Positions 1 through 4,299 of a DNA stretch of 64,000 nt are shown piece after piece. Each line of letters opens with the position of its first letter. The stretch's first letter is position 1. Under the pieces are notes generated by a model, which was given only the letters and a program-made list of their open reading frames with translations, did no database searches and was not told the origin of the DNA. Origin of the DNA: Ophelia neglecta. Its lineage: Eukaryota. Where the stretch lies: assembly GCA_965285935.1 (NCBI GenBank), contig OZ260662.1:11594001-11658000 (forward strand), given 5' to 3'. The position numbers and the translations under genes are program-made.

Positions 1-1559
1 TTATCGACCACCTGCGATTTCACAAAGTCGGTTGTTTCACGTGAAGCAGAGAAAAATTCCTTATCGGCAGGGTTATTGATGGAGCTGAATTGTGTGGTAA
101 AATCCCCTAAGCTAATATCCGGATGCTTGACCTCAGCCTGACCTTGGGAGTTGAACTTAGCCCAATATTTCTTTAAGTCAGTGTCACGTAGGTTGACTAT
201 CTTACGAGTGACCTCAATTCGATGTAGGTATTTACAGAATTTAGAAGCACTGTTAAATATTTTCTTTGCTTCATACATCATACGCTCCACATTCTCAATA
301 CCCTCACAAAGTCTGCCCTCGTCTCTGCATTTTTTTGCATAGTCATATCGTCGCCTCCACTTGTAGAATGTGCGACGTTTGTCCACGCAGTCGTCGTCTT
401 CCCAGGGAAGACGATTGTGGATGTGAATAGGGGCTCTGTAGCGTGAGCCAGTTTTCTTGCCCATTGTTATCTTACACGTGTCCTGCAAAATATCAGTAAA
501 TTTTTCGACCTGCTCATCGATGGTCAGAGCAGTAGAGTTCACAATGTCATGCAAAGATTCATACTTGACCTCGAGTCTATCACGCAGTTCCCCGAGCTTT
601 TCGTCATCCCAGACGATCCTCCAACTTTCTATTTCAGTTACGAGAGGGGCAGGTGGGGTTTTTACCCTTATCCTGGTTTCAACGTAGGCATGATCCGAAT
701 GTTCAGTCAGGCCCGACACGTACAATTCTGACAAACGGCCTAAGTCTTTATCCAAAACAAGAATATAATCAACTAAGGAGTGATAAGACTCATTTTCGCC
801 ACCCAGATATGTACATGCTCCTGTCAGAAGGTCAGGGGAAATCCTGCCATTACCTATCCTAAGCCCAGTGACAATGCCAAGCTCTACCAGTAATTTTCCA
901 TAATTATTCGGAGCATGCTTATCGGCGGATTTGCGAGGTGATTCAGTGTCCACAGAGTAATCGTCAGGGCATTCGCTAAATCTTACACTATCAGCCGCGA
1001 TGTAATCTGGCAGACTTCCCACGTGAGCATTGAGGTCACCACACATGACAAAATGCAGGTCACGCGCAGAATATTTACACATGAGTGACAGTATATCATC
1101 GCGAACCATTTCAAAATATAACCCCTTTTCAGAACTAGGAACACAGTTTTCAGGTGGGAAATAGCACACACAGAACATCCATATCTGCTGCGTTTCACCA
1201 AGGTTCATGCCAGGGACGTTGTATCTTAACCAGATGTATTTATCCTCGAATCTCTTTTCCTCAGTAAAGTAAATAGCTAGATAGTCTTTTACGAAAATTG
1301 CTAAACCACCGGAACATCTGCGAGCGCGGGGGTGAATATCACGTTTGTTTGCAACAAAGGATGTATAGCCAGGAAGGTTGATGTTTTGGAGGTCACACCC
1401 CCAGGTTTCTTGAAGACAAATTATGTCTTTATTTCTGACAAGAGTCAAAAACGATTCGTCTACTAGCTTATTGTTAGACTTGGTTGCTAACCCATGCACG
1501 TTCCAGGTAATCAAAGATAGTTCATCAGCATCAGTTAGACGTACCTGACTCGGTGATTG
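1..1559 (-). CDS. LINE ORF2, N-terminal apurinic-like endonuclease domain (partial; RT expected beyond the window)
   Basis: Hand translation from 1559: QSPSQVRLTDADELSLITWNVHGL...DIICLQETW...SGGLAIFVK...CYFPP...MCGDLNAHVG...SLVDYILV...EHSDHAYV...PWEDDDC. All canonical APE motifs are present. Missing from the ORF track, consistent with the frame running off the window edge. Confidence 0.9.
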
Positions 1560-3860
1560 CTATTCTGAGTCACCACCGTCAGGCGTGTTGCGGTCAACAT
1601 GGGTAAGTTCACTGGTCGAGGGGTCAGCATTTCGCAATGTGTTATTGGCTATTGCACATCTGAAATCAGCTGGGCTTAATGGTCCATTAGTAGGCAATGC
1701 ACGATTGGCAGCAGTCAGTGGTGGTTGTGTACCACGCCGCATCGACGCAATGTCGGCCACGGCACCGGTCGGTACACGACTTGTCGATTGGGAGGACAGA
1801 GGTGTACCCTGTGAATTTACTGTGGCACATTTTGACTTTGATTCAATATTTTTCAGTCTAGCTGACCTCCTTCTGTCTTCGCAAACATTCAGATTTTTCA
1901 CAGTTTGTTTTAAATGTTTTTTATTGTTATTGATACCGCGGTTGGTCACAAGATTGGCGGTTATGATGCGAGGGTCATCAATTTCATCAAATGTAGAGTT
2001 TATTGACAGGATATTATCGGACAGTGTGTTTAGTTCACCAATATTGGACGGGGGTCTGCCGGGAGTTTCCTCATTGGTTAACACACTAAAGTGGGTTGCG
2101 GTCGAATGTGGTAGTTCCATCATCGCCTTGCCATTTATGGTATCTCTTTGCGGGTGTGTAGATTTTCCTACCATCCCACGTACCGTCGATGTTGCTGTTA
2201 CACCCGTTTCCGTTCCAGCCATAGACACAGATAAGTCAACAACTTCTCTACATAGCACGGGCTCTGCGATCTTGTTTTCTGACAAATGGGCTGGAGTCTG
2301 TTCCATCATGTCAAACACCCTTCCTCCCCCGCGAGGGTTAAGAGGGATGTCAGCGACAATCCGGTCAACCCCATACTCATTGCCCTTAAGTTGTCCTGTT
2401 ACCTCACGACTGACAGCTGAGTTCTGTTTACCCACGCCAGCAGCCAGTCCCTCCAGCCCTTTCAGGCCAGAAGGTCCAGCCGCCGGGCTTGTATCAAATC
2501 CATTCATGCGTGGGCCTAGTGATTCAAAGCCAGGTGGTGGTGATCCAAATTTATTTTGACTGGTGAGGCCGACCGATCTGGGAATGAATTCAGGGCATGT
2601 TGGGTCATACTCAAACGCAAACATGTTTGGTGTGAAGCTAGTGTCAACAATTGGGGTGAACACAACGCCATGCCTGCCGGGATGCGGAGTGGAATGTGTG
2701 AGTCGAGATACGTCGGTGTGTGTACTAGGGGTGGGACTATGCGTCAAAATCTCGGCATGGAATGACGCAGGTAGAGGGGATACAGTCTGTGGTTGAGATA
2801 GGGTAAAAATAGGTGATGGTAATTTATTGGTGGAACGTACTTTGTTAGAGGCTCCATTGGGGCGCTTGTTAGCCGCCTGCTCATCATCGGACCTCTTGCG
2901 CTTCCTTCTCTCGCTAAATCCACTAGGAAGTTCTCCCACTTCATGTCCCTTTTCTTCAATCATCTTCTTTACCGCCCGTTTGAGACCACTCAAGTCGGCA
3001 TTTTTTACGACTTCGGCTATCTCTTCACACGGACGACGATCATAGCCTTCGAAAAAGTCATAGAGCACTTTGTCACCAACCATGATCTTGGCCGGAAAGT
3101 CCAGTTTAATGTTCTTGTCTATTTTCCGTAGCTCAGTTACAAACGACATGAGCATAGAGCGTGCTGCTCTTATCGGAAAAGGCAGGTCTTTGCTCACAAG
3201 GTTGCTCATCCCCATCTCACGCGCGTTGTCGAAAACTCGCTTGAGCATATTCCTAAGTCGAAGTGAAATGACTATCATGTTGGTCTTATCAGTTCCGTCT
3301 TGTTGGTCGACACGTCGCACAAATCTGGGATTAAAATCTTTCAAGTCATTCTCCTTGAACTTTAGTACTTTTAGGAAATCTTTAGCCAGGTCTAGGTCAC
3401 TCCTGTCGTCACGCTTCTTTATCCCGAAGATAACAAGGTTGTTACCCTTTTTATCCACCTCGTAGCGAAGTTCTCTTAGCTGGTCACGGCTTAGCTTGAC
3501 CTTAAATTCAGCTCGGAGTGCGGCGATCTCGGCCTGGAGTAATTGACTATGCAATCGGTCCTCGTCGGCTTTCAGGATTACATCAGCGATACCTTTCTCA
3601 TTCACGACGATCCGGTCTGTTATGGCAGTCAATTCCCCTCTGATACCTGACACATCGGCTTTCACGGCTTCTGTGTTTTCCCCAATCACCTCCACATGGG
3701 TCAGTAAGGGCAACAGTGCCTTCAACATTTCACGGTCCGTTGGTTCCCCATCCTCGCCTGGCATTTTGATGGTAGAAAATGATCCAAAACTCAGGAAAAC
3801 CAAGGTTATTGCTATAGTTATTAATCTCATCTGATGACTGGTAAGTTCACAAGTTGGCAT
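1560..3860 (-). CDS. LINE ORF1 protein (coiled coil + RRM-like/L1 ORF1-like domain + long low-complexity C-terminal extension)
   Basis: 766-aa ORF with a heptad-rich N-terminus and 'KKGNNLVIFGIK' RRM-type motif; lies directly upstream of the endonuclease. An alternative start at 3764 (MPGEDG) is possible. Confidence 0.85.
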   Translation of the reverse strand: MPTCELTSHQMRLITIAITLVFLSFGSFSTIKMPGEDGEPTDREMLKALLPLLTHVEVIGENTEAVKADVSGIRGELTAITDRIVVNEKGIADVILKADEDRLHSQLLQAEIAALRAEFKVKLSRDQLRELRYEVDKKGNNLVIFGIKKRDDRSDLDLAKDFLKVLKFKENDLKDFNPRFVRRVDQQDGTDKTNMIVISLRLRNMLKRVFDNAREMGMSNLVSKDLPFPIRAARSMLMSFVTELRKIDKNIKLDFPAKIMVGDKVLYDFFEGYDRRPCEEIAEVVKNADLSGLKRAVKKMIEEKGHEVGELPSGFSERRKRKRSDDEQAANKRPNGASNKVRSTNKLPSPIFTLSQPQTVSPLPASFHAEILTHSPTPSTHTDVSRLTHSTPHPGRHGVVFTPIVDTSFTPNMFAFEYDPTCPEFIPRSVGLTSQNKFGSPPPGFESLGPRMNGFDTSPAAGPSGLKGLEGLAAGVGKQNSAVSREVTGQLKGNEYGVDRIVADIPLNPRGGGRVFDMMEQTPAHLSENKIAEPVLCREVVDLSVSMAGTETGVTATSTVRGMVGKSTHPQRDTINGKAMMELPHSTATHFSVLTNEETPGRPPSNIGELNTLSDNILSINSTFDEIDDPRIITANLVTNRGINNNKKHLKQTVKNLNVCEDRRRSARLKNIESKSKCATVNSQGTPLSSQSTSRVPTGAVADIASMRRGTQPPLTAANRALPTNGPLSPADFRCAIANNTLRNADPSTSELTHVDRNTPDGGDSE

Positions 3861-4299
3861 GTGGAAATCTAGGTGCAGATTACGGCAAAAAAACTAGCAG
3901 AAAGTCCAATTTTATAGTGGCTTCACCAACTGGCGTCCCACTTACACGCATGCGCTCTCACAATAGGTATACGTTACTTATACGTTACATGTCTGCTACT
4001 CGTTATCAAATTCATGTACATATATTATGATTTCATATTGTATTCATTGTGGTCTGAATAAAATGTTCTGATTCTGATTCTGATGTAAAATCACTGTTCT
4101 CCTTTGCATGCCGAGCCATGAAGGCATCACAGACAATGAGGCTGCCGACAAATGTGCGAAAGAGGCCCTGGATTAAACAATTTTCCAAGTCAAATGTCCA
4201 TTTTCTGAAAATAAAAGCCTCTTCAAGCCTTATGGCTGGAACCTATGGCGGACTTCCTGGGATCAGGCTACATAAAACCAATTACATGCCATCTGCCCC

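What the first reader, a model, noticed from the sequence alone, without database searches (positions are those of the whole stretch)
1500..1571. LINE retrotransposon apparently expressing ORF2 by programmed amber stop-codon readthrough (UAG-CAA-UCA plus 3' stem-loop)
Seen: on the minus strand ORF1 ends GAC TCA GAA TAG and continues in the same frame CAA TCA CCG AGT CAG ... ATT ACC TGG AAC GTG CAT GGG (ITWNVHG, the first APE motif). There is no in-frame AUG before the endonuclease; the first Met lies inside the domain. The six bases after the stop are CAATCA. A stem can form starting 12 nt downstream (UCAGGUA 1548-1542 with UACCUGG 1509-1503, extendable by 3 bp). Established: UAG-CAR-YYA is the tobamovirus readthrough signal, and 3' stem-loops stimulate readthrough in viral and cellular genes. 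Characterised LINEs (L1, SART1) instead use reinitiation or translational coupling. Inference: this element makes a gag-pol-like ORF1-ORF2 fusion at a ratio set by readthrough, an unusual strategy for a non-LTR element.
Basis: partly seen in the sequence, partly recalled or inferred. Interest (0 to 1): 0.85.

Follow-up and report, generated by a model that had tools for sequence, protein, structure and literature searches.

The report
LINE with conserved leaky-stop signal
A young jumping gene (a LINE) and a whole lineage of its relatives keep their two genes in one reading frame, split by a single stop codon in the same sequence context that tobacco mosaic virus uses to read through a stop, so the enzyme is most likely made as a rare fusion to the first protein, a strategy I did not find described for this class of element.

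Summary
On the minus strand, ORF1 (766 aa) ends in TAG at 1562-1560. The same frame continues with no AUG into a 1189-aa endonuclease/reverse-transcriptase ORF2, and the six bases after the stop are CAATCA.

All four copies of this young family (97-99.5% identical, different flanks) carry the stop. In the same genome, 23 of about 28 related families (30-45% identity in the endonuclease) also have ORF1 and ORF2 in one frame, split by exactly one stop at the same place. So do 8 of about 15 related contigs from other organisms.

The ten closest families form a clade. They keep the nucleotides NAA-UAG/UAA-CAA-YYA while the encoded residues change (E/Q/K before the stop, S/L/P after). This points to an RNA-level signal matching the type I (tobamovirus) readthrough motif.

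The junction stop is UAG in 26 of 31 cases, whereas ORF2's own terminator is UAG in 1 of 13.

The proposed 3' stem-loop is not supported: pairing probability is 0.002, there is no excess stability, and it is not conserved.

Programmed readthrough giving an ORF1-ORF2 fusion is therefore the best explanation (about 0.7), but it rests on sequence comparison alone. No RNA or protein data were available. Ten literature searches found no description of readthrough in a non-LTR retrotransposon.

The parts
1..3966 (-). The part of a 6.35-kb non-LTR retrotransposon copy that lies in the window. Its 5' end is near 3966. The 3' 2.4 kb lies beyond the window start, to about G000:C2:11591620.
   Evidence: Alignment with the copy on C7 (L007:2251-8593) stops at window 3966. 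Contig loose ends lie at 3959/3968. The 3' end is a (CATTGT)n tail.
3861..3966 (-). 5' untranslated leader
   Evidence: Lies between the alignable 5' end and the first ATG of ORF1.
1563..3860 (-). ORF1, 766 aa, no Pfam match. The C-terminal ~430 aa are S/T/P-rich and unalignable between families.
2952..3737 (-). [quoted passage not shown]
   Evidence: AlphaFold model from a 12-family alignment, mean pLDDT 77.8. The ten best PDB matches are all the human LINE-1 ORF1p trimer (best E 9e-7, TM by target 0.64-0.65 for the top three).
1554..1565 (-). Putative readthrough cassette GAA-TAG-CAA-TCA (NAA, stop, CAR, YYA).
   Evidence: Across the ten closest families, information content is 2.0 bits at -2, -1, the first two stop bases, +4 and +9, and 1.0-1.5 bits at the third stop base and +5 to +8, against 0-0.7 in most of the flanks. 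It matches the type I motif UAG CAR YYA (PMC13517186).
1560..1562 (-). In-frame amber codon that ends ORF1
   Evidence: Present in all 4 copies. No read-level variant.
1512..1559 (-). 16-codon open leader between the stop and the first endonuclease motif (I-T-W-N-V). It contains no AUG.
1..1559 (-). N-terminal 519 codons of ORF2. The whole ORF2 is 1189 aa = L006:4993-8559 minus strand.
   Evidence: Pfam Exo_endo_phos at residues 17-184 and RVT_1 at 598-848.
1008..1511 (-). Core of the apurinic-type endonuclease domain (Pfam match).
1503..1548 (-). I judge it a chance complement.

Best explanation
This is a recently active CR1/L2-like LINE. Its full-length RNA carries a Gag-like ORF1 (an L1-type coiled-coil/RRM/CTD protein with a long disordered tail). 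In the same frame, after one UAG, comes the endonuclease/reverse-transcriptase ORF2, which has no start codon of its own. Most ribosomes stop at the UAG and make ORF1p. A small, fixed fraction decodes the UAG with a near-cognate tRNA, helped by the context AA-UAG-CAA-UCA, the type I signal known from tobacco mosaic virus. Those ribosomes carry on and make a ~1956-residue ORF1-ORF2 fusion. This sets a high ORF1p:ORF2p ratio and ties the enzyme physically to the ORF1p that coats its own RNA, as Gag-Pol does in gammaretroviruses. What is shown: the frame arrangement, its conservation, the nucleotide-level conservation of the signal, the UAG bias, and the absence of an AUG. What is inferred: that readthrough happens, how efficient it is, and that the fusion is the active form.
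For: (1) One in-frame TAG followed by CAATCA, and no AUG before residue 118 of ORF2.
(2) Three full-length copies and one 5'-truncated copy, 97.4-99.5% identical, with different flanks and different tail lengths, all carry the stop. The lineage that transposed therefore had it.
(3) 23 family-level clusters in this genome (30-45% identity in the endonuclease) have a homologous ORF1 and an ORF2 in the same frame, split by exactly one stop 13-25 codons before the W-N motif. Multi-copy families agree internally.
(4) The ten closest families form a clade (support 91/93) with terminal branches of 0.35-1.3 changes per site. All ten have NAA before the stop, nine have CAA after it, and all ten have YYA next. 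The residues differ (E/Q/K and S/L/P), and three families read CAA-UAG-CAA-YYA.
(5) Background in the same ORFs: CAA:CAG is 99:94, NAA codons are 8.3%, YYA codons 6.6%, and CARYYA dicodons 3 of 2970. Even given the amino-acid class, 10/10 NAA has p = 0.005 and 9/9 CAA has p = 0.002.
(6) The stop changes identity (UAG/UAA/UGA) between families but never becomes a sense codon. It is UAG in 26 of 31 junctions against 1 of 13 ORF2 terminators (Fisher p = 3e-6).
(7) Relatives on contigs from other organisms share the arrangement: L081, L083, L085, L086, L087, L101/L103, L146, L147. About 50 more distant LINE loci almost never do.
(8) Type I UAG-CAR-YYA works in plants, mammals and yeast, needs no 3' structure, and tolerates all three stops in plants and yeast (review PMC13517186).
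Against: There is no expression, ribosome-profiling or protein evidence: no RNA run holds the element, and the runs laid were DNA. The families are related, so part of the conservation is inheritance rather than independent evidence. Outside the ten-family clade the hexamer after the stop is not conserved, even between sister families, and several contexts (GAC, GAG, AGC and others) are not established readthrough signals. Either basal leakiness suffices there or another mechanism serves the whole lineage. No downstream structure is detectable. Human L1 shows that ORF2 can be translated without its AUG by a termination-dependent route (PMC5972666). A few related families have shifted to overlapping frames (L061/62, L066) or to an ORF2 with its own AUG (L080, L082, L084, L148, L149). 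So the lineage can use other routes.
Confidence: 0.7

Rival explanations
1. Termination-dependent reinitiation, or AUG-independent internal initiation as proposed for mammalian L1. Ribosomes finish ORF1 at the UAG and some resume at a non-AUG codon in the 16-codon leader (in-frame UUG and AUU lie just before the T-W-N motif), giving a free ORF2p.
For: L1 ORF2 is thought to be made by an unconventional termination/reinitiation route, and SART1 by UAAUG coupling (PMC5972666; PMC5009743). The stop always sits immediately upstream of the endonuclease. Many distant families lack a recognised readthrough context.
Against: Reinitiation places no constraint on the frame of ORF1 relative to ORF2, yet the frame and a single stop with no spacer are kept in 23 families and 8 foreign contigs. 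No AUG lies at or near the stop. It does not explain nucleotide-level conservation of AA-stop-CAA-YYA with varying residues, or the UAG bias.
Confidence: 0.17
2. The stop is a defect. The family is a dead or trans-mobilised lineage derived from a single-ORF element that acquired a nonsense mutation.
For: Only 3-4 copies exist. One copy of a related family has AAG in place of TAG, giving a continuous ORF (L034).
Against: The stop is at the same site in 23 diverged families, each with intact long ORFs on both sides, and in other organisms. Stop identity changes but is never lost at family level. The L034 change is private to one copy of a family whose other copies keep TAG.
Confidence: 0.03
3. 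The stop is removed at the RNA level, by A-to-I editing of UAG to UIG (as at the hepatitis delta amber/W site) or by splicing out a short segment.
For: A CAG|GUACGU donor-like string and a CUAAC lie 12-25 nt after the stop. One distant family reads TGA-GTAAGT.
Against: No double-stranded structure forms around the stop. UAA-bearing families would need two edits. Edited or spliced RNAs would be copied back into the genome, yet no copy has TGG or a deletion at the site; the one altered copy has AAG. The donor-like string lies downstream of the stop and is not conserved.
Confidence: 0.03

Closest known systems
Tobacco mosaic virus replicase readthrough (type I signal, UAG CAA UUA; Beier and Grimm classification)
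   Same: The stop is followed by CAR-YYA. Three families here even carry CAA-UAG-CAA-YYA, the arrangement I recall from TMV. The downstream ORF encodes the polymerase. No 3' structure is needed. UAA variants occur.
   Different: The host is not a plant virus. It is a nuclear non-LTR retrotransposon of a 762-Mb eukaryotic genome with metazoan-type CR1/L2-like LINEs. The review states that type I is not known in animal viruses. Readthrough is not measured here.
Gammaretrovirus (MoMLV) Gag-Pol by UAG readthrough (type III signal plus pseudoknot)
   Same: An RNA-binding structural protein and a polymerase sit in one frame separated by UAG, so the fusion would set the stoichiometry. Some distant relatives have UAG-GGA/GGG/GAU contexts (L056, L083, L146, L058).
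   Different: The focal element has C, not G, after the stop, and shows no pseudoknot or stable structure starting about 8-12 nt downstream. It has no protease to separate the products.
Mammalian LINE-1 and silkworm SART1 ORF2 translation
   Same: A bicistronic LINE RNA. ORF1p here has the L1 ORF1p fold. ORF2 is needed in far smaller amounts than ORF1.
   Different: L1 has a 63-nt spacer, and reinitiation is proposed for it. SART1 uses overlapping UAAUG (PMC5972666). Here there is no spacer, no AUG, and a conserved same-frame relation.
2A 'StopGo' sequences in L1Tc and sea-urchin non-LTR elements
   Same: Another translational recoding device used by LINEs (PMC5972666).
   Different: 2A separates products of one ORF. 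Here a stop must be bypassed, and no 2A-like motif is present at the junction.
LTR retrotransposons that use stop-codon suppression (for example soybean SIRE1, env-like ORF)
   Same: A retroelement that places a downstream ORF behind a leaky stop (Havecker and Voytas 2003, seen only as a reference in PMC7385966).
   Different: A different class of element with a different replication mechanism. I did not read that paper.

Membership tests
Type I programmed stop-codon readthrough site (UAG-CAR-YYA) | Stop codon followed directly by CAR YYA | tested here: met
   TAG CAA TCA at 1562-1554. Nine of the ten closest families match, and the tenth has CGG UUA.
Type I programmed stop-codon readthrough site (UAG-CAR-YYA) | A functional coding sequence continues in the zero frame after the stop and has no independent start | tested here: met
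   1189-aa EN/RT ORF, first Met at residue 118 inside the EN domain.
Type I programmed stop-codon readthrough site (UAG-CAR-YYA) | Evolutionary conservation of the stop and its context at nucleotide rather than protein level | tested here: met
Type I programmed stop-codon readthrough site (UAG-CAR-YYA) | Measured readthrough above background, and a detectable extended protein | not testable with these tools
   No RNA runs hold the element. No ribosome-profiling or proteome data were available.
Type III (MoMLV-like) readthrough | UAG followed by GGV/GUA/GAU and a stimulatory structure starting about +12 | tested here: not met
   The context is CAA. The fold z-score is +0.47, and the proposed helix has pairing probability 0.002 and is not conserved.
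APE-type non-LTR retrotransposon (LINE) | N-terminal apurinic-like endonuclease and a central reverse transcriptase in ORF2 | tested here: met
   Pfam PF03372 E = 8e-13 and PF00078 E = 3e-28. The RT matches R2 and L1 ORF2p chains at E about 1e-25.
CR1/L2 lineage of LINEs | 3' end made of a short microsatellite rather than poly(A); type II (or esterase/PHD) ORF1; no RNase H | tested here: met
   (CATTGT)2-4 tail. ORF1p has the L1 ORF1p-like fold, and type II ORF1 is reported for the L1, CR1, L2 and R1 clades (PMC4120745). No RNase H match. A relative carries a GDSL-esterase/NADAR ORF1.
CR1/L2 lineage of LINEs | Placement of the RT domain within the CR1 or L2 clade in a tree with reference elements | not tested
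Termination-reinitiation / translational coupling (SART1, L1) | A restart codon overlapping or close to the stop (UAAUG), or an inter-ORF spacer | tested here: not met
   No AUG within 117 codons after the stop, no spacer, and the frame is kept.

The most novel reading that the evidence does not exclude
A whole lineage of CR1/L2-like LINEs, present in this genome and in several other organisms, expresses its endonuclease/reverse transcriptase only as an ORF1-ORF2 readthrough fusion. One clade within it has acquired the tobamovirus-type AA-UAG-CAA-YYA signal. This would be the first non-LTR retrotransposons shown to use programmed readthrough, and a type I signal native to an animal-type retroelement.
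Probability: 0.6. Interest if true: 0.82.

Novelty: new variant of a known kind. Interest (0 to 1): 0.74.

Why it matters
How LINEs translate ORF2 from a bicistronic RNA is a long-standing puzzle. The described answers are L1 reinitiation, SART1 coupling, frameshift-like overlaps and 2A peptides.

A lineage that uses retrovirus-style readthrough would add a fourth route. It would imply that a covalent ORF1-ORF2 fusion can carry out target-primed reverse transcription. It would also give a simple physical basis for cis-preference and for the very low ORF2p:ORF1p ratio.

The same data provide a natural series of stop contexts to feed reporter assays: type I, CGG, GGA-type, and a recurrent UAG-GAC-A of unknown activity. 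They also warn annotators that 'ORF2 without a start codon' or 'internal stop' in such LINEs is not a sign of decay.

Tried and rejected
- Expression data: the look-up of sequencing runs found no RNA holder. The three runs laid are DNA contigs of the source sample. Depth was about 90-130 on the element against about 39 in the flank, so they only confirm the sequence and a copy number of about 3.
- Stem-loop: an MFE fold, an ensemble fold and a cross-family complementarity test all gave nothing above controls.
- ORF1 by sequence: Pfam gave no match even at E = 5, and PDB sequence search gave nothing. The Atlas gave only a weak lead to baculovirus FP-like clusters. The fold search settled it as L1 ORF1p-like.
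- Word-based homologue search of ORF2 gave only 8 hits. The exhaustive search gave thousands, none above 37% identity.
- The metagenome scan with the clade alignment returned mostly distant LINEs without the arrangement. It is useful only as a negative control.
- Literature: ten full-text searches on readthrough, stop suppression and fusion in non-LTR/LINE/CR1 elements found no description. Targeted reading of five reviews and papers also found none. From memory only, unverified: old descriptions of some plant LINEs (Arabidopsis ATLN) may mention an in-frame amber codon between the ORFs.
- Editing hypothesis: the one copy lacking the stop has AAG, not TGG.
ORF1 N-termini of some families are therefore incomplete in alignment A2.
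Full report
**Observation.** Read on the minus strand, the window holds a long ORF from 3860 to 1563 that ends GAC TCA GAA TAG (TAG = 1562-1560). The same frame continues CAA TCA CCG AGT CAG and stays open to the window start. I fetched the neighbouring DNA of the same chromosome; the window is G000:C2:11594001-11658000. The downstream frame runs for 1189 codons, with Pfam Exo_endo_phos at residues 17-184 and RVT_1 at 598-848. Its first Met is residue 118, inside the endonuclease domain. The TAG is the only in-frame stop in 1956 codons, and ORF2 itself ends in TAA. TAG is therefore a genuine stop in this organism, not a reassigned codon. DNA contigs from the source sample show no variant at 1554-1562.

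**Anatomy of the element.**
- The element is about 6.35 kb.
- It has a 5' leader of about 106 nt (window 3966-3861).
- ORF1 is 766 aa and ORF2 is 1189 aa.
- There is a ~370-nt 3' UTR, then a (CATTGT)n tail with 2 repeats in this copy and 4 in another.
- ORF1 has no Pfam or PDB sequence match.
[quoted passage not shown] Its ten best PDB matches are all the human LINE-1 ORF1p trimer.
- This is the 'type II' ORF1, reported for the L1, CR1, L2 and R1 clades (PMC4120745).
- Given the microsatellite tail, the lack of RNase H, and a foreign relative whose ORF1 carries GDSL-esterase/NADAR matches, I file it as CR1/L2-like. I did not run an RT tree with reference elements.

**Copies of this family.** The genome holds three full-length copies and one 5'-truncated copy. 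They are 97.4-99.5% identical, with unrelated flanks and different tail lengths, so they are separate insertions. Read depth agrees with about three copies. All four carry TAG CAATCA.

**Related families in the same genome.**
- A six-frame search with the endonuclease found at least 150 scored matches. I examined 70 loci.
- They fall into about 28 family-level clusters at 30-45% identity to the focal endonuclease.
- In 23 clusters there is a long upstream ORF in the same frame as ORF2. It is separated from ORF2 by exactly one stop, which lies 13-25 codons before the W-N-[VI] motif.
- This upstream ORF is homologous to the focal ORF1 wherever its N-terminal part was available.
- The first Met of the ORF2 frame usually lies 90-220 codons in.
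- Where several copies of a family were sampled, they agree.
- The ORF1 tails and the short leaders are unalignable between families and differ in length. Yet the frame relation and the single stop persist.
- Exceptions are L061/L062 and L066, where ORF1 lies in another frame and overlaps ORF2 by 71 or 26 nt, and a few degraded loci.

**The signal.**
- In an endonuclease tree the ten closest families form a clade (support 91/93) with terminal branches of 0.35-1.3 changes per site.
- Their junctions read NAA, then UAG (8 families) or UAA (2), then CAA in nine families (CGG in one), then UCA, UUA or CCA.
- Information content is 2.0 bits at -2, -1, the first two bases of the stop, +4 and +9. It is 1.0-1.5 bits at the third stop base and at +5 to +8, against 0-0.7 in most of the flanks.
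- The encoded residues vary (E/Q/K before the stop, S/L/P at the second codon after it) while the nucleotides obey NAA and YYA. Gln is always CAA, never CAG.
- In the same ORFs CAA:CAG is 99:94, NAA codons make up 8.3%, YYA codons 6.6%, and in-frame CARYYA dicodons occur 3 times in 2970.
- Even granting the amino-acid class, 10/10 NAA has p = 0.005 and 9/9 CAA has p = 0.002. This is the signature of selection on the RNA, not on the peptide.
- The motif is the type I readthrough signal UAG-CAR-YYA. According to a 2026 review it acts in plants, mammals and yeast, needs no downstream structure, and works with all three stops in plants and yeast. It has not been seen in animal viruses (PMC13517186).
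- From my own knowledge, not checked here: two adenines just 5' of the stop are a known stimulator of readthrough in yeast.

**Identity of the stop.** Across families the codon switches among UAG, UAA and UGA but is never a sense codon at family level. The only loss seen is one copy (L034) with AAG, while its sister copies keep TAG. The junction stop is UAG in 26 of 31 independent junctions, whereas ORF2's own terminator is UAG in 1 of 13 (7 UAA and 5 UGA; Fisher p = 3e-6).

**Other organisms.**
- The closest foreign proteins are only about 30-33% identical. I fetched 14 of their contigs and added hits from a metagenome scan.
- Eight show the same arrangement: a same-frame ORF1, one UAG, then the endonuclease. 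They are L081, L083, L085, L086, L087, L101/L103, L146 and L147. At L146 only 23 open codons remain before the contig end.
- Five have an ORF2 with its own AUG and no same-frame ORF1: L080, L082, L084, L148 and L149.
- Among about 50 more distant LINE loci from metagenomes, only L101/L103 and L144 have a long same-frame upstream ORF. The arrangement is therefore a property of this lineage, not of LINEs in general.
- Outside the CAA-YYA clade the contexts vary: UAG-GAC-A (recurrent, in three organisms' contigs as well as here), UAG-GGA/GGG/GAU (type III-like), UAG-CGG, and others. They are not conserved between sister families.

**The stem-loop.**
- The two arms exist and give 7 pairs, but I could not find the claimed 3-bp extension.
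- The helix closes a 32-nt loop (-5.2 kcal/mol) and has pairing probability 0.002.
- The 100 nt after the stop fold no better than shuffles (z +0.47).
- Across 23 families, z-scores of the 120 nt after the stop scatter around zero, ranging from -2.5 to +1.2.
- The best complement between the post-stop region and the W-N codons averages 6.0 bp in true pairs against 5.74 +/- 1.35 in cross-family mispairs. 23% of mispairs reach 7 bp.
- I reject the stem as part of the signal.

**Mechanism and rivals.** The best-supported reading is programmed readthrough giving mostly ORF1p and a minor ORF1-ORF2 fusion.
- *Reinitiation or AUG-independent initiation*, as in L1, is the serious rival. It would explain why the stop hugs the endonuclease. 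It would not explain the kept frame, the absence of any spacer, the nucleotide-level signal, or the UAG bias.
- *A defective lineage* is excluded by the comparative data.
- *Editing or splicing* is unlikely. There is no duplex around the site, UAA variants exist, and no genomic copy bears the expected TGG or a deletion.
- For the families without a recognised context, either basal leakiness is enough (LINEs need very little ORF2p) or their contexts are unrecognised signals. That part is open.

**Novelty.** Ten full-text searches and targeted reading of recoding and LINE reviews found L1 reinitiation, SART1 coupling, HeT-A frameshifting and 2A peptides, but no readthrough in a non-LTR element. 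The library lacks most subscription journals. I also have an unverified memory that some plant LINE descriptions mention an in-frame amber codon. I therefore rate this as a new variant of a known kind rather than categorically new.

**Limits.**
- All evidence is comparative sequence analysis.
- The families are related, so counts of families overstate independence.
- The clade assignment is provisional.
- No RNA or protein data exist for this organism in the tools.

Noticed in passing
L061/L062 (G000:C5:24.35 Mb, C20:0.317 Mb) and L066 (C8:5.22 Mb): Related LINE families in which ORF1 (514 and 466 aa open) lies one base forward of the ORF2 frame and overlaps it by 71 or 26 nt. Within the same lineage some members seem to have swapped the in-frame stop for an overlap or frameshift-type arrangement.
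   Followed up: partly
L047, L048, L050 (this genome); L085, L086, L147 (contigs from other organisms): A recurrent junction context UAG-GAC-A, often followed within about 15 nt by AGGACA-like strings or an R-T-R peptide. It is shared across organisms and is not one of the three classical readthrough contexts, so it may be a second signal.
   Followed up: partly
L067 (G000:C2:109.04 Mb): The junction reads TGA-GTAAGT, which is also a near-perfect 5' splice-site string. It is the only family of this kind seen.
   Followed up: no
L034 (G000:C7:27.49 Mb): One copy of a TAG-CAATCA family has AAG instead of TAG, giving an uninterrupted open frame of 1405 aa across the junction. Its sister copies, 99% identical there, keep the stop.
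   Followed up: yes
G000:C2:113.2-114.4 Mb: At least ten endonuclease-like matches (about 35% identity) lie in one 1.2-Mb stretch, each with the same 283-aa open frame and most with one internal TAG. This looks like a tandemly amplified block containing a truncated LINE.
   Followed up: no
window 1585-2559, plus strand: A 324-aa open frame lies antisense to the disordered C-terminal half of ORF1. It is also open (279-336 aa) in the other copies. It is probably a by-product of the composition of that region.
   Followed up: no
window 3928-4152: Just upstream of the element's 5' end, contig depth jumps to 360-1400 against about 39 in the unique flank, so another high-copy repeat abuts the insertion. 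A 34-bp indel variant lies at 4117-4152.
   Followed up: no
window ~3995-4005 and L007 ~2214-2223: Two copies share the 10-mer CGAGTAGCAG 30-40 nt upstream of the alignable 5' end, with unrelated sequence in between. The true 5' end may be variable or lie further upstream.
   Followed up: no
L149:3-1235: A foreign relative of this LINE lineage has an ORF1 with NADAR and faint GDSL-lipase matches, followed by a spacer and an AUG-initiated ORF2.
   Followed up: no
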